Assembly (NCBI GenBank): GCA_964035545.1
Contig: OZ037771.1
Coordinates: 5,365,190 to 5,429,189 of the forward strand
Length of the DNA stretch: 64,000 nt
Direction of reading: 5' to 3'
Origin: Bugula neritina
Taxonomy: Eukaryota; Animalia; Bryozoa
Part shown: piece by piece, positions 15,927-24,737 of the stretch
How positions within the stretch are numbered: position 1 is the first letter of the stretch
Layout of the letters: the number at the start of each line of letters is the position of its first letter
The notes under the pieces: generated by a model
What the model was told of the DNA's origin: nothing
Database searches by the model: none
What the model saw: the letters and a program-made list of their open reading frames with translations, nothing else
Program-made: the position numbers and the translations under genes

Positions 15927-16986
15927 AAACAGTTTCAAATAAAAAGTACGGTAAGTGTTTTCAGCAATATATAATGTTCCATGTTTAGAACTTGAAGCCA
16001 AAAACATTTAGTAAAAAGTTCTACAACATTCCTGTAAAATAAGCACAGATGTGCAGTCTTTCCAAATAGCCTTTGTTATAATATTTGTAGCATGAGAAAT
16101 AAACCCATCACATTCCCAACCCAAATGCCAAACTTAACTAAGTGAAGTCTAAATTGTTTTTCCAGCCACCAGCCTGTAAATGTTTTAGCAACTCTTTACT
16201 TTAAGAAGGTGAAAATCTCATGGCAGAGGTGATGTTATTTGAAGTAAAGATCTAGAATATGCAATGTGAGAGAGTAATGGTAATGAGTAATGACTGATTT
16301 GAGTGAATAAGTATTTTCAATTTGGTTGATATACTCTTCCTAGATGACATATCTGATTGAACATCGCCAGGACAACCAAACTCGTAACCCTAACTGGGAG
16401 TTTAGCCTGACACAGTAAGTGACTAATCCAGGTGGAGGGGGGGGGGGCATTAGTGACAGTAATTATTACAGGAAGCTATGACCATATGACAAGTCAAACC
16501 TAACCCTACCTAAAGTGTACACGTCTGCTCTTGATTACAGAGTAAGTTGCTCCCAGAACTCACTTTACCTGCGAGACATTTCACAAAGAAATCTTATAGC
16601 AGTGCGACAGGTAGATGTTATACGCAGCGTTTCCATTGCTTCAGATTTTGCAAATGAATGTTGCATTCGATGTTTGGGACCAGTTGCATCGAAGGAAAAA
16701 AAACAACCACAAGATGATGCAAAAGGTAGTCACAAATCCATCTCTATGAGCATCCATTCGAAGCGATGGAAAAGCAGTAATAGACCTATGTTGGACTTAC
16801 AATGTACACTTAATTGTAAGATTCCACTTTACATAAAAGGTAAAAGCTACAGAAAAGAGACAAAAACAGAGCAAAGTATTTTATAATAACAAAAGGCAAT
16901 TCTTGCTTTTCTATTAACAAAATTAGGGACCGTAATAAAATTTCAATTTCTAGTTACTGATACACAACATAAAGTGTCCATTACCT

Positions 16987-16992
16987 TTTATT
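16987..16992 (-). promoter_or_regulatory. Canonical polyadenylation signal AATAAA
   Basis: tttatt on +, ~19 nt after the ORF stop at 17011; first minus-strand AATAAA I can find downstream of the RBM41 stop. Confidence 0.55.
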
Positions 16993-17010
16993 TTTGAAAG
17001 TGAGAGTAGC

Positions 17011-17334
17011 TCAATCTTCAGTTTTCCCATCGGTTTGTGTGACTTCTGTTGAGTTTGTGTTTGGATCCTTAATGATGTCTTCGTAAGATGGCGGCGGGGC
17101 GTCTCCAAACAAGCTCTTATACTTGGGCAGCTGAGCAGTGGCGGGATCAACAGGAGACTCTGGAGGAACCGGTATATACTGTACTACAGGAACCGACCGC
17201 ACGTACGACCTCCGCCCATCCCCGTCAAAACTGTGCTCTGGCTCTGATGAACAGGAACAGAGTTTGGTAACAAAAGCCACTCCAGTTATACAGAGCAAGG
17301 CTGAAGCCATTGCTAGAATCACAGAGAGCACCAT
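17011..17334 (-). CDS. 107-aa single-pass membrane protein with LPKY and PPSY (WW-domain/NEDD4-binding) motifs
   Basis: MVLSVILAMASALLCITGVAFV hydrophobic segment, juxtamembrane Cys (LCSC), Pro-rich tail with LPKY and PPPSYED; ATG in ATAATGG context; acceptor ccttactgccttttag 14 nt upstream (17349-17350). Confidence 0.75.
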   Translation of the reverse strand: MVLSVILAMASALLCITGVAFVTKLCSCSSEPEHSFDGDGRRSYVRSVPVVQYIPVPPESPVDPATAQLPKYKSLFGDAPPPSYEDIIKDPNTNSTEVTQTDGKTED

Positions 17335-17517
17335 TATGGTGGTTGCAGCTAAAAGGCAGTAAGGAGCTGTGATTGTAGCACTGCTAAGTGGTAGCAATGC
17401 TTTAAAGTAAGTACAAGTACCAGCAGGTTGAGTGAATAATTCTTGAGCACACTCATACTTGTGTGCAGTTAGGGCAAAGTTACAAAAATAACTCAAGGCA
17501 CAATGCAATCACCTTGC

Positions 17518-17915
17518 ACAACATTTAGTAGGTAATACAACATTTAGTAGGTTAATACTAAACTTAGTAGGTTAGTACAACACTTAGTAGGTTAGTACAA
17601 TACTTAGTAGGTTAATACAACACTTAGTAGGTTAATACAACATTTAGTAGGTTAATACAACACTTAGTAGGTTAGTACAGTAGTAGGTTAGTACAACACG
17701 TAGTAGGTTAATACAACACTTAGTAGGTTAGTACAGTAGGTTAGTACAACACTTGGTAGGTTAATACAACACTTAGTAGGTTAATACAACACTTAGTAGG
17801 TTAATACAACACTTAGTAGGTTAATACAACACTTAGTAGGTTAATACAACACTTAGTAGGTTAATACAACATTTAGTAGGTTAGTACAATACTTGGTAGG
17901 TTAATACAGTAGGTT
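17518..17915. repeat. 20-bp minisatellite, ~20 copies (aacacttagtaggttaatac)
   Basis: Tandem units inside the putative RBM41-ORF2 intron. Confidence 0.95.
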
Positions 17916-19024
17916 GGTGTGAGAACATGCTAGTTAGCCAACTAAAAACAAAACAAAAAAATTCTAATAAGCAGCACAAACTGTATTGCATGAAATTTTC
18001 AGATGTTTTACAATGCGATTCGTCAAATTGAAATACTGGTATACGTTAAAATAAATCTTAGGGTTTGACATATAATTAGAAATGATTCAATACGTGAAAA
18101 ATGTTAGCTGCAAGAAGAGTACATGCAAACACCATACTGCCTGCAGTCTAGCAGTTCACACTGAAGCAACCAGCATAAGCCATGTTCAAGGTAGCGTTGA
18201 GTCTGCCTCAGAAATTATTACAATAATCAGCTGATGTTAACAATGCGAAGTCTGCGCTCTAACTCTATGTATGAAGTGTGTTTTAGTTGAGACACGTTAA
18301 TGAGAGGAAAATCAAATGCTTAGTTCATGTAGCTATACTTTCAAAGAGTAGCATTGGCTGATTTGAACAAAATATTCAACGCTGAGTTGAAACAAAATGT
18401 GTTTTGAACGTTCAGCTATCTACTATATTACAGGTATTAAAATGTATCATATTTAGATATAAATTTGATAAAAAATTGACACTAAGTAATTATATTACAA
18501 AAACATGGTCAGATATGTAGAATGCTTTTAATAAAATACATTTTCATATAATATGTGGAAGTATGCTGATGACTGTTTCAGAGAATATGCGATTCCCTAC
18601 CAACTTATTTTAGAATAAGTTGGTGGAAAGGTTAATGATGAATACCTTCACAGAGCACTAGAAAATAGCTACAATTGAGTGGTTTTGGTTTCCACAAGCA
18701 AAGCTACCTGATGGCTGAAAAAAACGAATTTGAGAGAATTGATCAAAATTGATTGGTCACTGTATTTTTCGTTATTTACCATTCTGAATGTTTTTCAAAA
18801 CAAGTCCGTCATGATTTAACAAACTTGCTACAATGTTGCTGTGACTAGCATGAGGTCATAACAATGATGAAATATAGCACACGCATCATTCGAAGGTGTT
18901 TAAACCGGACTGGAGCTGTGCTGGCTAGAATAGACAGAGTTTAACACTGTGTAAAAAAAATTCAGTCAAGAAGGGGGCATAAATTCACTGTCCCTGCCAG
19001 AAGTCTCCAAGAAAACATAAAGTG

Positions 19025-19033
19025 ACTCACCTA
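19025..19033 (-). other. Consensus 5' splice site TAG|GTGAGT 6 nt after the RBM41 stop
   Basis: Minus strand reads CAG TGA TTGTAG|GTGAGT; GT at 19030-19029. Confidence 0.7.
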
Positions 19034-19036
19034 CAA

Positions 19037-22000
19037 TCACTGAGTTGTTGGAGTTGTCTTATCTAAGTGAGGCTGTTTATAGCTGATTATCATTGGTCGC
19101 CCACGGAGCTTGTAGCCAATCAGAGCATGTAAACATCTGGATGCAGTTTCAATATCTACATGTTTAATATAGAAACGTATGCTAGAGAGACCACAGCTAA
19201 TAGTTATATCGATAGAGCAAATTCAAGAAATGATGCTTCTGGCGAGCTTTAAAAACATATATGCAATACTTCTACACGAAACTAATAGCTTTTAAATTCA
19301 TCAAACCAGTATTTACAAAGTACATTACTGTGTTGAGATAATCTCACCGGCACAGGTGATGAAGGCCTGGCCGCGCATCCTGCCAGTCATTAGCTTACAG
19401 GTGATGGGGATGTCTCCAGGCACCCTGAACCTTCCAAACAGGTGCACCAGGTGGTCCTGTTTCACTGTGGATCCTAAATTCTTCACATACAGAACCTGAA
19501 GCATAGGATGGTAAGTTACTACAGCATAATATCCACAATACAACAGCAAGTCATGCCATTTGCTGCATACTGGGAGTTTGCTGTAGATATTGCACAACAG
19601 CCATACTAAATCAAATTATTGTTGGGTGTGTTAGGTATATGACTATATGCTACATACAGATTAGAAAATGGTGAAGTCCATGGAAATATACACAAAAGAA
19701 ATGCTGAGTGTTAACACATGCAACATAATGCTGGTATACTAAGAAGACATAGAAACAGCAATACACCCTTGAAGCTGTTAGACTCATATTCTCTGTAAAG
19801 TAATGTAAAAAGAATTCAGGGCCAGGATTTAGCTTATTAAAAAACAAATTCTCAGAAGTGTGTCATAGGAAGCTACGAAATCCTTCACCTTTAAACTGAT
19901 AAATAGAAAAATATTATCCTAAGTTTACAAATTTCAGAGTTTCCGTGCTGAGTATAATTTGTTTAGGAAAAATAACTTGAAAATAAGATTTGAAAAACTT
20001 TGTTTATATGAAGACACATGCATTGTCTATGACAAGTAATGTTTACTTCTCACCCAACATCAGCTAATATACAACATCAAGTCTAGATCTAATATATATT
20101 GGAGTTATCTCTATAGTAAAAAGCATGAGTTGGAGTTGCGTTATCAATGTTATGACTTACAGGAGAGGGCTCACCCTTATGGTAGTTAGTAAACTTAGGG
20201 AGTTGCTTCACCTCTGCTATGGTAAGTCTATTAGTTAGCAGATCCTCATCTGAGACGTCCAGATCCGCATCTTTTGGCTTTGGACCAACAAACTCTGTAT
20301 CATCAAATGCACAAGATTAGGTATACTAAAGCTACTAACTATACTACACAGTGAAGGTGGTGAAAGTAAGACATGTCCAGTAACTGGTAGAAATGTGCGC
20401 CACACACCACAGCTTGTGAATAAAACTCATGCAGTTTTATAGTTACTATCCCTGTGAGAGAACCTCTGATGGAAAGGGTTTTTCGTTATCTCGGGCTAAG
20501 GACTTATTCAGATGGGGCACAAAAGCAATTATGACTGAATGCTCTTCCTAACATCACCGATGGCCTTTACTGGGGCGCGAAGTCATGATTTTGTGCTTTC
20601 TAGGCAAATGCTGTAACCCCTAGACCACGGCACACACCACAGTTTGTGAACAATTATCAACAGTTAATATAACCTGCAGAAGCAGCTAGCTTTGGAGTCA
20701 CTGGCACCCAGGGGTTAGGGAACGGGTGGCCGTAGTCCGGTATAGAAGGACGTCTCTCTGAAAGTTCTGAAGCTAATTGTTGTAGTTGAGATTCAGGAGT
20801 GCTGCCAGTATCAGAGGCAGGTGCTGCCTTCATCACTAGATTGCTGAGAGTGGCTTGCTCAGTACGACCTGAATACATACAGAGTAGAGGTGTTCTATGA
20901 GTAACATCAGTGTGTGTATTGCAATGAGTGAGATACTGGCTGAGTAAACACATGGGCTGACAGTAAACAATTCCACACTTTGGCAACATTACATAAATAT
21001 TAGAAATGAAGAATATTAGACAATGCTAACATGTGTCTTCTTGAGTAATAGAGAGAAAATGGGCAAAAAGGAGAGGGGCAGAGTGGATAAAGAAAGGGAA
21101 AGGGGGTAGAGAGGAGGGGTAGAGGACACTAGAATATTGGTGATTCCGTTGTGATCAACTGCCCTTTCAAACCTCAGCCATGTTGCTTAGCATAGAACAC
21201 CAGCTGGTGATTGAAGAAACTTCAAATTGTAAAGAATCAATCACTTTTAGCAGTTTGCTGCCTTAAAATGGTCAAAACTTCGTACACTCACATAAATCTT
21301 GTCTTCAAACAACTACTCATGTATGTTAAAACCTGAACTGATGTTTTTATGACTTGTTTAGAGGGCATTGAAAAATTTTATTTCCATACCTAGAAGCGCA
21401 AGGTTACAAAGATGCCTTGGATCGTATGGATAACAAGGTACAGCCAGTGGTTTGTTTGTACACTAACACTAGACTGACAGACAGACAAACAGCAATAATA
21501 AGAAATTTGAGTGTGTAAAGAAGAACATGTAGAAAGATTGGCAAACTATCAGTAGAAACCTTGATTAAGAGATTGTTCCAGCTCTAGCTTGAGTCGAGAT
21601 GCCATCTTAGCTGTAGAAAATCCTTTCTCTGATTGGACTCTCTCATCATGTGCTTTGATTCGCTGACCTAATTCTGCTAGGCGCTGCTCCAATACATCTG
21701 GATTTATTTTTGAAGTCGACAAGTTTTTCTAAAATAAAACTTTAAGTTACTAGATAGAAGATTAAGATACTTATTATAAACATTCAATCAGCTATATGTG
21801 TTCTATCTGCTTTAACTAAAACAAAGTCTTTAGAATATTAAATAATGCAAAAAATTCTCAATGAGTAACAAAATAGCTAAGAATTTGCTCAAAAAGTGTA
21901 AATATTGAACTATGAATGTTTATATAAGTTTAATACGTAATACAGTATAGGTTAAACACATACATGGTGCCTGTAATGGAGAACATGTAAACAATAATGT

Positions 22001-23733
22001 GTTTATAAACATGACTGAGTCACCCACTTGTTTCTCAAACTGACTCATCCATAACTCTATTTCATCGTCCCGGAGCCCACAGTTTCGAAGTTCCTGAACA
22101 TTCTCCCTTTCATTGGCAAGAGTTTTATACGCCACTAGAGACTGCTCTCCCTTTACCTCATCACTTGATTGCTTAAATACTGACGGTTCCTTGAACTCTT
22201 TAAATCTACTTCTCACTCCGTCTACAAAGTACCACCAGTGTACCTGCATTACTTGATATAGTATAAAGCAGTATACATGTACAGAGCACCATAGCATATA
22301 TATTTTATGAACAAACTACATTTTATTACATAGAAGGTGCTTTGTTGAAATCACTCATGACAAATATTATATTTTTATATTATGTAATACGTTGCAATGA
22401 GAACTAGCCATTTGCAAGTGTAGCATATTATTACACACCAAGAGAAACATCGATAGATGTCTGTGTCTCGTACAGCTTCTGTATCTGCTCGTCTGTTTCA
22501 GAGATTATCTTCTCCACTGGAGCATCATCTAGTCTTACTCGTTTCAAGATAGCCATGCCAGAGGGAGTTGTCTTTCTACTGCATGTAGTATACTAGTACA
22601 GTTAGTTTACTAGCCAATAATAAGCTCAGATTGAAATATTATTATGTCTGATAATGGCTATACTTGGACATATTATACAATACTAAAACATAATCATGAA
22701 ATTACATAACTAACAATTAGGTAATTAATTAAGACTATAGGATAAATCGAAGTTTAAATTAAGCAGATTGCATTTATTATTATAGCCATGACAATTTAAC
22801 AATGTTTTATGTTAGCACGGTAAAACCAAGACAAAATTGATAAATTTTCGATAGGATTTTCACAGTCTATATAAAAACTTGTCAAGAAAATAGATAGAAC
22901 GGACACCATAAACAAAAGATTGTGTAACGCTTGAAACAATTTAATTTATGTTGAAAGCATGAGTCTTTAATTTTGTTGACTACGAGGTTTATAAGGCAGG
23001 TTTATATATTATACTGAAGGCTAGCTCTGGGAGAAATCTGTTCACACAAATCTTGGGTAACTAAATCAGGTAAATTTAGTTCATCATAAACAATTAAATT
23101 GTTTGAGGTGTATTTTAAAGAAAAAATTAATAGAGCTGCATAAAACCATATCTTTTAGCAAAATGTTACACACAAAAAACTTATGTTTGATATAATGTGC
23201 AGCAATACTTATTAAATATAACAAATTTTATTGATCGAATAAAGGGCGATTATTTAAGTGGAAGATTTCAAATTTTTTTGTGTTATTTAATGTTCGAAAA
23301 TTTCTGCTTTAAAATATGCCAAGTCATTTAGCTGATCAACTCAGGCGTTTAGCTTCAGCAAAGCTACTTCAGTCTGAAAATTTCAAGTAACCAGTCAGCA
23401 AGCACTCAGGTGGACATGATTCAGGCCCAATTCTTATATTTATTTATTATAACTATAGTAAATAAACTATTTAAATTGTTACCAAAATTATTAAAGTATA
23501 GTGATATATAATCTTTATGCCAATAGCATAAAATCATGATAATAGTAGTTTGAATGAAGATAGTTATTAGTATGCCAATTAAGCACTAGCTGAAAAACTG
23601 AATGTATAAGAATGGTGATGCAACAACAATTTTGATAATAATGATATTCACAACAAGAGCAATAATTATAAAAAATAATATTGACAAAGACAATGATATT
23701 TTACCTAGACTCATCGATTTTTCTCCGGCTCAT
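19037..23733 (-). CDS. RBM41: RNA-binding protein 41 (RRM; paralogue of U11/U12-65K), 8 coding exons, ~375 aa
   Basis: Phase-consistent exons 23705-23733 (GCCATG, MSRRKIDES), 22439-22578, 22028-22221 (ELRNCGLRDDEIELW), 21560-21728, 20674-20868, 20161-20294 (NRLTIAEVKQLPKFTNYHKGEPSP), 19348-19495 (VLYVKNL...MTGRMRGQAFIT), 19037-19155 (GYKLRGRPMIISY..TGA); total 1128 nt. Motifs match the RBM41 family as I recall it. An alternative start at 22556 is possible. Confidence 0.9.
20401..20650 (-). mobile_element. Full-length tRNA-derived SINE with 20-bp target-site duplication in an RBM41 intron
   Basis: TSD cacacaccacag(c/t)ttgtgaa at 20401-20420 and 20631-20650; minus strand has A box TGGTCTAGGGG, a degenerate B box and body AGGAAGAGCATTCAGTCATAA resembling the RTE-related AGGAAGGGCATCCGG motif. 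Confidence 0.75.
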
Positions 23734-24737
23734 GGCGATTGTGGTGGTAATACTATGACAGTACGCTTTCACTGAGAAGGCTAGAAACTAAGCACAACTT
23801 TAACCTAAAATTTAATTTAAAAACAAAATATGAAATTACAAATGCTGCTGCAAGTTAGAGTGAAAATCATGATGATTATAGTCACAAAAGGTGATCAATT
23901 TTAAATGCTTTTACTTTGATGGAAAAGTTTTGTTTAGGTTGAAAGTTTGTTTGAAAAAGAGACCTAAACGCATGATTTTACTGAAATTTCAATACGTAAC
24001 TTAGTACCATTCTCAGAGCTTTTTGCTCTAAAATATGTATAGTTCAGTTAAAGTGCTGTATTAAAATGTTAACCTCAACCTTAGGTGGCAAAAATAATGA
24101 ATATATCAAGATGATAAATTACAAATATTAAAACAGAAAGCTAGAATGCAAAACAATATTTAAATATTTATATAATGGAGGTCTTTTTCTACTTGAAACA
24201 TATCTTTATTGCTAGAAAACTCAAAACATAGTGATTCTAACTAGTATGGCGGTTTTTTAATTTAACAACATAAGAGATATGCTTAAAGAAGGCATTGTGT
24301 AGATAAAACATATTTAAAATGAAGGCAAAAGGAAAAAAAAATTCCATTAGTATTACTATTAGTACTAATATTAATAATACTGATAGTATTACTATAACTA
24401 TGTTATAGTGGTAATTTACTATTTATATTTAGTGGCTAACATTGGCAGCGGTCTAGTTTAGTTCGCTGGCATACGATATTGGCTGTCTGCATATTGCTAT
24501 CTGAATTGGTCTTAAGACTGTCATTGTCCTACTAGCAGACAGCCATATCAATAAGCTGAATAGATGAATAGACACATTTACATTTAGTATTGCAACAGCT
24601 TGATTTTACTCCTTACAATTTGAATTACATAATCATTAATGATCAAGATAATAAATACTTTCAACTCATATCTCTGCTGTCTAGAAAGCAGAGTTTGACA
24701 ACCTGCAGTAATAAAGTAATATAGTTATATTGGTAGG

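What the first reader, a model, noticed from the sequence alone, without database searches (positions are those of the whole stretch)
16987..19155. Candidate spliced bicistronic mRNA: RBM41 followed 20 nt later by a PY-motif membrane ORF
Seen: the RBM41 stop (TGA 19039-19037) is followed 6 nt later by a perfect donor TAG|GTGAGT. A good acceptor (ccttactgccttttag, 17350-17349) lies 14 nt before a strong-context ATG opening a 107-aa TM+PPxY ORF. The spliced junction would read TGA TTGTAG|CTGCAACCACCATA ATG G, and a further RBM41-frame stop overlaps the ATG (TAATG). By eye there is no minus-strand AATAAA between the RBM41 stop and 16987-16992, just after ORF2 (only an ATTAAA near 18530). I found no separate first exon for ORF2. 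Established: an intron <50-55 nt after a stop escapes EJC-dependent NMD; animal bicistronic mRNAs exist but are rare. Inference: a minor-spliceosome-associated RRM protein and a NEDD4-adaptor-like protein share one transcript, decoded by reinitiation, SL trans-splicing at the acceptor, or an internal promoter.
Basis: partly seen in the sequence, partly recalled or inferred. Interest (0 to 1): 0.85.

Follow-up and report, generated by a model that had tools for sequence, protein, structure and literature searches.

The report
RBM41 3'UTR intron heading into orphan gene
In the bryozoan Bugula neritina the splice donor six bases after the RBM41 stop codon is real, but the one available messenger joins it to a different acceptor than predicted, so the strongly conserved small membrane-protein gene downstream probably shares RBM41's transcription unit and gets its own messenger by leader trans-splicing, which is still unproven.

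Summary
The genome is Bugula neritina.

**Shown:**
- A fully spliced RBM41 mRNA contig from a sibling lineage (L007) uses the donor 6 nt after the stop.
- It joins that donor to the acceptor at 17943-17942, not to the one at 17350-17349. This gives a 1,089-nt 3'UTR intron (19030-17942).
- The next exon starts 607 nt before the ORF2 ATG and runs into the 20-nt minisatellite, where the contig ends.
- There is no AATAAA or ATTAAA from 17941 until after ORF2.
- The same contig starts with 10 non-genomic bases at an AG acceptor. These bases match the exon end of multi-copy SL-RNA-like genes on other chromosomes, so RBM41 mRNA is probably trans-spliced.
- ORF2 shows 13 synonymous and 0 non-synonymous differences between lineages, so it is a real protein-coding gene.
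- ORF2 has no detectable homologue, and no ORF2-like frame follows RBM41 in three other bryozoans.

**Inferred:** ORF2 is the downstream gene of an operon-like unit and receives a leader at its otherwise unpaired acceptor.

**Not tested:** This scan had already reported a spliced leader in this genome, on other DNA (s1-457112).

The parts
23705..23804 (-). RBM41 exon 1 (5'UTR and ATG at about 23733). The predicted leader acceptor AG is at 23806-23805.
   Evidence: L007 bases 12-117 align here. In the sibling genome the 10-nt non-genomic leader abuts an AG. The window's own acceptor position is inferred.
19348..22578 (-). RBM41 coding exons 2-7: 22578-22439, 22221-22028, 21728-21560, 20868-20674, 20294-20161, 19495-19348.
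   Evidence: Exon-by-exon alignment of the spliced contig L007, with GT-AG enforced at each boundary. tblastn of P0011 agrees.
19031..19155 (-). RBM41 last coding exon, with stop TGA at 19039-19037 plus 6 nt (TTGTAG).
   Evidence: It is 119/120 identical to L001, so even synonymous sites are frozen.
17942..19030 (-). 3'UTR intron of RBM41 (GTGAGT...tttttag), 1,089 nt. It contains the conserved non-coding blocks 18874-18775 and 18474-18050.
   Evidence: The junction CAGCAG|TTGGCTAGC in mRNA contig L007 falls exactly on GT/AG in L001, and both sites are conserved in the window. Block identities are 0.94 and 0.945 against 0.83-0.92 for the introns, with no triplet periodicity.
17518..17941 (-). 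RBM41 3'UTR exon 9: 33 unique nt, then the 20-nt x 20 minisatellite (17908-17518). Its 3' end is unknown.
   Evidence: L007 bases 1223-1309 align from 17941 into the repeat and the contig stops there.
17335..17517 (-). Conserved non-coding element directly upstream of ORF2. It includes a possible donor CAAG|GTGATT (17513|17512), a 35-codon uORF (17456-17349) and the strong acceptor AG at 17350-17349.
   Evidence: It is 180/183 identical to L001. All 3 changes would be non-synonymous in the ORF2 frame, so it is not coding. The fold z-score of -2 is not compelling.
17011..17334 (-). ORF2: a 107-aa single-pass membrane protein with PPSY and LPKY motifs.
   Evidence: 13 synonymous and 0 non-synonymous differences from L001, pS 0.165, P about 1e-8. 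Single copy in the genome. No Pfam family and no homologue found.
16987..16992 (-). AATAAA 19 nt after the ORF2 stop. The aligned hexamer in the sibling lineage is GATAAA.
   Evidence: Conservation falls from 0.94 to 0.83 just downstream.

Best explanation
RBM41 and ORF2 form one operon-like transcription unit.

**Shown:**
- RBM41 mRNA carries a non-genomic leader at its 5' end.
- It has a 3'UTR intron (19030-17942) that starts 6 nt after the stop.
- It continues in an exon that begins 607 nt before the ORF2 ATG and runs into a minisatellite.
- ORF2 is a strongly constrained protein-coding gene.

**Inferred:**
- Polymerase that started at RBM41 reads on across ORF2, because no canonical poly(A) signal intervenes.
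- The strong acceptor 14 nt before the ORF2 AUG has no partner donor in the observed mRNA, so it receives a spliced leader. This would give a short-5'UTR, monocistronic ORF2 mRNA.
- RBM41 mRNA ends in or just after the minisatellite. The 183-nt ultra-conserved element would then be the intercistronic processing region.
- ORF2 is predicted to be a membrane protein with its C-terminus in the cytosol, whose PPxY, LPxY and YxxPhi motifs would recruit NEDD4-type ligases and sorting adaptors.
For: - **The contig is a real mRNA.** The spliced contig L007 (SRR4125604) covers all 8 coding exons and is not a retrocopy.
- **The junction is precise.** It falls on GT/AG exactly 6 nt after the stop and joins to 17941.
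- **No canonical poly(A) signal.** There is no AATAAA or ATTAAA between 17941 and 16992 in the window. In L001 the first one after the exon start lies 455 nt beyond ORF2.
- **Leader evidence.**
  - The first 10 nt of L007 are absent from the genome at an AG acceptor.
  - They are absent from 40 kb upstream.
  - They are identical to the exon end, followed by GT, of six near-identical small genes on another chromosome. A second family of at least 16 copies also exists.
- **Cis-splicing of RBM41 mRNA at 17349 is unlikely.** A second 3'UTR intron far from the stop would expose RBM41 mRNA to NMD (established rule).
- **Translation of ORF2 from the long RNA is unlikely.** Six AUGs lie between 17941 and the ORF2 AUG.
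- **ORF2 is a real gene.** dN/dS is 0/13.
- **The upstream element is constrained.** The CNE is 98.4% identical against about 87% for introns.
Against: - No RNA molecule linking exon 9 to ORF2 was seen, and none carrying a leader on ORF2. The contig stops in the repeat.
- The distance from the RBM41 stop to ORF2 is long for classical operons.
- No poly(A) signal was identified for RBM41.
- ORF2 could have its own promoter in the conserved element. AUGUSTUS with transcript hints called it as a separate single-exon gene.
- The leader evidence at this locus rests on 10 nt of a single contig.
- No clear Sm site and no Rfam match was found for the SL-like genes.
Confidence: 0.42

Rival explanations
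1. ORF2 is an independent gene with its own promoter in or just upstream of the conserved element (17517-17335). It may or may not lose a short outron by leader trans-splicing. RBM41 mRNAs end at a non-canonical site in or near the minisatellite, and the two genes are simply close neighbours.
For: - The exact ORF2 protein is found only on DNA contigs and not in the run that yielded full-length RBM41 mRNA, which suggests uncoupled RNA levels.
- The ATG context is strong (A at -3, G at +4).
- The compact conserved block 17517-16980 looks like a self-contained gene.
- The adjacency is absent in Watersipora and in two other bryozoan lineages.
Against: - No recognisable TATA or initiator element, and no upstream first exon, was found.
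- RBM41 transcription demonstrably enters the region 600 nt upstream, with no canonical poly(A) signal.
- A 98% conserved 183-nt promoter is unusual when synonymous sites next door differ by 16%.
Confidence: 0.3
2. One reading: some RBM41 transcripts use the alternative acceptor at 17349 with the same donor. This would give a bicistronic mRNA with a 20-nt spacer, and ORF2 would be read by termination-reinitiation.
For: - The donor is real.
- The acceptor at 17349 has the best polypyrimidine tract in the region and is conserved.
- The junction would be NMD-immune.
- Other notes of this scan report short-spacer two-gene mRNAs in this genome. One, s1-457112, claims RNA support; I did not check it.
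Against: - The only assembled mRNA uses the acceptor at 17942.
- No contig carrying both ORFs exists in the collection.
- Reinitiation after a 375-codon ORF is inefficient in eukaryotes (established knowledge).
Confidence: 0.1
3. A second 3'UTR intron (donor CAAG|GTGATT at 17513, acceptor at 17349; 164 nt) removes the conserved element. This would give an RBM41-minisatellite-ORF2 mRNA, or an ORF2 mRNA whose non-coding first exon lies in the minisatellite region.
For: - The donor matches the consensus at 8 of 9 positions, which is better than four of RBM41's real donors, and it is conserved.
- The intron length is typical for this gene.
Against: - It would place an exon junction more than 400 nt after the RBM41 stop, which predicts NMD.
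- Five AUGs (17928 to 17524) would remain upstream of ORF2; the sixth, at 17456, would be removed with the intron.
- An intron that is 98% conserved along its whole length is unexplained.
- There is no RNA evidence.
Confidence: 0.08
4. Exon 9 runs unspliced through ORF2 to the AATAAA at 16992, and ORF2 is translated from this long bicistronic mRNA by internal initiation directed by the conserved element.
For: - There is no canonical poly(A) signal before 16992.
- The conserved element contains a 10-bp hairpin.
Against: - ORF2 is not assembled in the run that assembled RBM41.
- The fold z-score is only -2.
- Cellular IRES claims are rarely upheld (general knowledge).
Confidence: 0.07

Closest known systems
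Spliced-leader-resolved operons (nematodes, tunicates, flatworms, chaetognaths)
   Same: - Two same-strand genes.
- The upstream transcript reads toward the downstream gene.
- The downstream gene has an unpaired strong acceptor a few nt before its AUG.
- The organism appears to have leader RNA genes in two sequence families.
   Different: - No leader-ORF2 junction has been seen.
- The gap is 1.7 kb in the genome, or 613 nt after removal of the 3'UTR intron, against roughly 100 nt or less in classical operons.
- No AAUAAA lies upstream of the acceptor.
- I found no paper reporting leader trans-splicing in Bryozoa in the searchable library.
Stop-proximal 3'UTR introns (NMD-immune class, junction less than 50-55 nt after the stop)
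   Same: The junction lies 6 nt after the stop, as shown by the mRNA contig. The donor is conserved between lineages even though the spacer has turned over.
   Different: - The intron holds exon-level conserved non-coding blocks.
- The following exon is mostly a minisatellite and leads into another protein-coding gene.
Animal bicistronic or conjoined transcripts (Drosophila stoned and Adh-Adhr, SNURF-SNRPN, CERS1-GDF1)
   Same: Two unrelated ORFs lie on one strand in one apparent transcription unit.
   Different: No mature mRNA with both ORFs has been demonstrated. In the observed isoform, six upstream AUGs separate the two ORFs.
Small PY-motif membrane proteins (NDFIP1/2, WBP1/TMEM92, TMEM52, PRR7, PRRG)
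   Same: - One transmembrane helix.
- A proline-rich tail with PPxY and LPxY.
- The nearest Atlas feature clusters with a Pfam family are of this general type.
   Different: - No sequence homology and no Pfam hit (best is TMEM171 at E 0.13).
- NDFIP proteins have three helices.
- Binding to NEDD4 is untested.

Membership tests
Stop-proximal (NMD-immune) 3'UTR intron | A spliced junction in mature mRNA less than 50-55 nt downstream of the stop codon. | tested here: met
   L007 joins stop+6 to the exon at 17941, with GT/AG exact in L001 and in the window. The evidence comes from a sibling lineage; the sites are conserved in the window.
SL trans-splicing operon | The organism trans-splices a leader from dedicated SL RNA genes. 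| tested here: met
   A 10-nt non-genomic 5' end sits at an AG acceptor. The identical exon end plus GT occurs in 6 (type A) and at least 16 (type B) small conserved genes, which share a compensatory stem change. There is no cis copy. This rests on a single contig, and no Sm site was recognised.
SL trans-splicing operon | One primary transcript spans both genes. | tested here: inconclusive
   RBM41 exon 9 runs toward ORF2 with no AATAAA or ATTAAA before it. The contig ends in the minisatellite.
SL trans-splicing operon | The downstream gene's mRNA carries the leader at its acceptor. | not testable with these tools
No RNA-derived contig with ORF2 exists in the collection.
   The only mRNA contig shows 19031>17941. 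A minor isoform cannot be excluded.
RBM41 (paralogue of U11/U12-65K) | Full-length orthology to named RBM41 proteins, with a C-terminal RRM. | tested here: met
   - All seven hits of P0011 (Bugula neritina RBM41, residues 10-375) in the window are 85-100% identical.
- P0011 is 57% identical to Watersipora 'RNA-binding protein 41-like' and 46% to the Amphiura protein.
- RRM_1 hits exon 7.
NDFIP-type NEDD4 adaptors | Three transmembrane helices plus cytosolic PPxY motifs, with membership of the Pfam family. | tested here: not met
   ORF2 has one hydrophobic segment and no Pfam family. Only the PPxY and LPxY motifs are shared.

The most novel reading that the evidence does not exclude
Bugula neritina (phylum Bryozoa) has leader-resolved operons. 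RBM41-ORF2 would be one of them. The two SL RNA gene families (C3 type ending ...TTGCTAAAAG, C8 type ending ...TTGCATAAAAG) would divide the work as SL1 and SL2 do in nematodes. The ultra-conserved 183-nt element would be the signal that couples RBM41 3'-end formation to ORF2 trans-splicing.
Probability: 0.2. Interest if true: 0.8.

Novelty: new member of a known kind. Interest (0 to 1): 0.58.

Why it matters
I found no published report of spliced-leader trans-splicing or operon-like gene pairs in Bryozoa in the searchable library. This locus adds an independent, sequence-level case:

- a leader fragment on RBM41 mRNA, and two families of leader-RNA-like genes;
- a concrete downstream candidate gene whose mRNA structure can be tested with a single RT-PCR.

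It also shows that a lineage-restricted 107-aa membrane protein, more constrained than RBM41 itself, sits in what would otherwise be annotated as RBM41's 3' region. Annotation pipelines would split or miss this arrangement.

Tried and rejected
- **Joined model.** I did not build or search the joined spliced model. I used the natural contig L007 and the stored protein P0011 instead.
- **Conserved variant poly(A) site.** AATACA at 17987 with a T-rich downstream element looked like RBM41's poly(A) site. I rejected this because the T-run is the polypyrimidine tract of the acceptor that is actually used.
- **N-terminal extension of ORF2.** The frame is open for 58 codons upstream. I rejected an extension because all 3 substitutions there are non-synonymous and synonymous sites are frozen.
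- **In-frame RBM41-ORF2 fusion by exon skipping.** Four of the six RBM41 donors have the compatible phase, so the frame match is not significant, and there is no support.
- **Convergent 442-aa neighbour gene in L001.** This is a 30-nt minisatellite read open in several frames.
- **Rfam.** There are no hits in 16000-23500 or on the SL-like loci.
- **ORF2 homologues.** None were found by word-indexed search. The Atlas gave only generic small transmembrane proteins. Nothing ORF2-like lies downstream of RBM41 in Watersipora or in two other bugulid-like lineages.
- **Most TTGCTAAAAGGT hits.** Many of the hits I inspected are a retrotransposon coding sequence or chance matches.
- **L002 and L008.** Both are DNA contigs and give no RNA evidence.
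Full report
**Organism and material**

- The window is G000:C7:5365190-5429189 of a 216,009,554-bp assembly. That size matches the chromosome-level Bugula neritina assembly described in PMC11480708.
- ORF2's exact protein also occurs in GCA_010799875.2, the 2020 draft of B. neritina (PMC7576161). That locus (L001) is a diverged sibling lineage. Its introns are 83-92% identical to the window, which makes it useful for comparison.

**Observation**

- stop TGA at 19039-19037, then TTGTAG|GTGAGT;
- an acceptor with AG at 17350-17349, 14 nt before an ATG in strong context;
- a 107-aa ORF at 17334-17011;
- AATAAA at 16992-16987;
- no AATAAA in between, and one ATTAAA at 18532.

The candidate donor and acceptor are stronger than any of RBM41's own splice sites. 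GGTRAGT occurs about 0.2 times per kb on this strand. Only two sites in the interval meet my acceptor criterion, at 17942 and 17349. In L001 the donor and the following 10 nt are identical, although four of the six spacer bases differ. The acceptor region is also identical.

**ORF2 is a real gene**

- Window and L001 differ at 13 sites in ORF2, and all 13 are synonymous (pS 0.165, pN 0, P about 1e-8). RBM41 itself has about 5% amino-acid differences between the two lineages.
- ORF2 is single copy in the genome.
- It has no Pfam family and no homologue by word-indexed search. The Atlas gave only generic look-alikes among small PY-motif membrane proteins.
- It has one hydrophobic segment (residues about 2-23), followed by a lysine and a cysteine cluster. 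Its motifs are LPKY (69-72), PPSY (81-84) and three YxxPhi. A NEDD4-adaptor role is inference only.

**RNA evidence**

The protein cluster of Bugula RBM41 instead held a 375-aa member on a 1,309-nt Logan contig (P0021, L007, run SRR4125604).

- L007 is collinear with all eight coding exons and contains no introns.
- G000 contains no retrocopy of RBM41, so L007 derives from mRNA.
- After the stop it reads CAGCAG and then TTGGCTAGC.... The donor 6 nt after the stop is therefore used, but it is joined to the acceptor whose AG is at window 17943-17942.
- The 3'UTR intron is therefore 19030-17942 (1,089 nt), and exon 9 starts at 17941.
- The contig then enters the 20-nt minisatellite (17908-17518) and ends there. 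This is what a k-mer assembler does at a tandem repeat.
- The predicted 19031>17348 junction is not seen.

**What lies between exon 9 and ORF2**

- From 17941 there is no AATAAA or ATTAAA until 16992 in the window. In L001 there is none until 455 nt beyond ORF2.
- The 183 nt before the ATG (17517-17335) are 98.4% identical between lineages, whereas introns are about 87% identical and ORF2's synonymous sites differ by 16%. The three changes there would all be non-synonymous in the ORF2 frame, so this element is non-coding.
- Six AUGs with short uORFs lie between 17941 and the ORF2 AUG. The last uORF ends exactly on the acceptor TAG.
- Translating ORF2 from an unspliced exon-9 mRNA would need reinitiation after a 375-codon ORF and bypass of six uORFs. 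I consider that unlikely.
- The exact ORF2 protein is found only on DNA contigs (L001, L002; L008 is a stop-loss variant). It is not found in the run that assembled RBM41. This argues weakly against abundant RBM41 mRNAs that include ORF2.

**Spliced leader**

I treated that as a lead to test.

- The first 10 nt of L007 (TTGCTAAAAG) do not match the genome. The genome has a pyrimidine-rich tract and an AG at that exact point.
- That 10-mer followed by GT is absent from the 40 kb upstream of RBM41 in the window and from L001.
- In G000 the 12-mer occurs 85 times against 16 for the reversed control. Many of the hits I inspected are a retrotransposon or chance.
- Six hits on chromosome piece C3 (31.46-31.63 Mb) are near-identical units of about 260 nt, in which the 10-mer is followed by GTAAATATCA.
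- A second family of at least 16 copies lies on C8 (11.85-13.14 Mb). It shares the upstream boxes, the donor and a conserved 3' domain with a compensatory stem change. Its exon ends ...TTGCATAAAAG.
- Rfam has no match for these genes, and I could not point to a canonical Sm site.
- I found no paper reporting leader trans-splicing in Bryozoa.
- My reading is that these are SL RNA genes and that RBM41 mRNA is trans-spliced. This rests on one contig end plus the gene families.

**Synthesis**

- The stop-proximal donor is real, and the junction lies within the distance that escapes NMD (established rule).
- A further 3'UTR intron ending at 17349 would place a junction more than 400 nt after the stop and should trigger NMD. 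The acceptor before ORF2 is therefore probably not cis-spliced in RBM41 mRNAs.
- In an animal with leader trans-splicing, a strong acceptor without a partner donor is the expected substrate for the leader.
- I therefore favour an operon-like unit in which ORF2 receives a leader at 17348, with the conserved element acting as the intercistronic processing region (confidence 0.42).
- The main rival is an independent ORF2 promoter in that element (0.30).

**Phylogenetic range**

- Watersipora subatra RBM41 (P0006, L003) has no strong donor after its stop and no ORF2-like frame within 10 kb downstream.
- Contigs of two more distant bugulid-like lineages (L065; L067 and L068) have longer RBM41 tails, no donor after the stop, and no membrane or PPxY ORF within 3.3-6 kb downstream.
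- As far as the data go, the arrangement and ORF2 itself are restricted to the B. neritina complex.

**Limits**

- No read-level data were available.
- The RNA evidence comes from one contig of the sibling lineage, not from the window's own lineage.
- Absence of ORF2 from RNA contigs depends on how complete the collection is.

Noticed in passing
G000:C3:31460316-31629802 (L039-L042, L044, L045) and G000:C8:11.85-13.14 Mb (L053-L064): There are two families of SL-RNA-like genes, with 6 and at least 16 copies. They share upstream boxes, the donor AAAAG|GTAAATATCA and a 3' domain with a compensatory stem change, but their exon ends differ (...TTGCTAAAAG versus ...TTGCATAAAAG). There is no Rfam match and no obvious Sm site.
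   Followed up: partly
window 17518-17908 (-): The 20-nt x 20 minisatellite is transcribed as part of RBM41's 3'UTR exon 9. Many of its units contain TACTAAC- or ACTAAA-like words. It abuts the conserved element directly.
   Followed up: partly
L001:10990-12318: The 442-aa 'gene' called next to ORF2 in GCA_010799875.2 is a 30-nt minisatellite that is open in three frames on both strands. It is an annotation artefact, and the window has almost none of this repeat.
   Followed up: yes
L008:783-1169 (JGI 3300002729 DNA contig): One sibling-lineage haplotype has the ORF2 stop TGA changed to TGG, which extends the protein by 21 residues to 128 aa. If that allele is functional, the mRNA must extend at least 66 nt past the normal stop, which is beyond the AATAAA/GATAAA site.
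   Followed up: no
window 19037-19156 and 18050-18474, 18775-18874 (-): RBM41's last coding exon is 119/120 identical between lineages, so its synonymous sites are frozen. Two non-coding blocks inside the 3'UTR intron are 94-94.5% identical with no triplet periodicity. Their function is unknown.
   Followed up: partly
window 19019-19042 (-): A 7-bp hairpin pairs the stop-codon region (AGUGAUU) with donor positions +4 to +10 (AGUCACU). In L001 the stem is kept through a C-to-U change (G-C becomes G.U). It could modulate use of the donor. The overall fold z-score is not significant.
   Followed up: partly
window 17349-17456 (-): A 35-codon uORF in the conserved element ends exactly on the TAG of the acceptor, 14 nt before the ORF2 AUG.
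   Followed up: no
L003:38961-39420: In Watersipora subatra the RBM41 stop is also followed by a minisatellite (units of about 20 nt, ...ATGCCACAGTATGCAGCC...), although its sequence is unrelated to the Bugula one.
   Followed up: no
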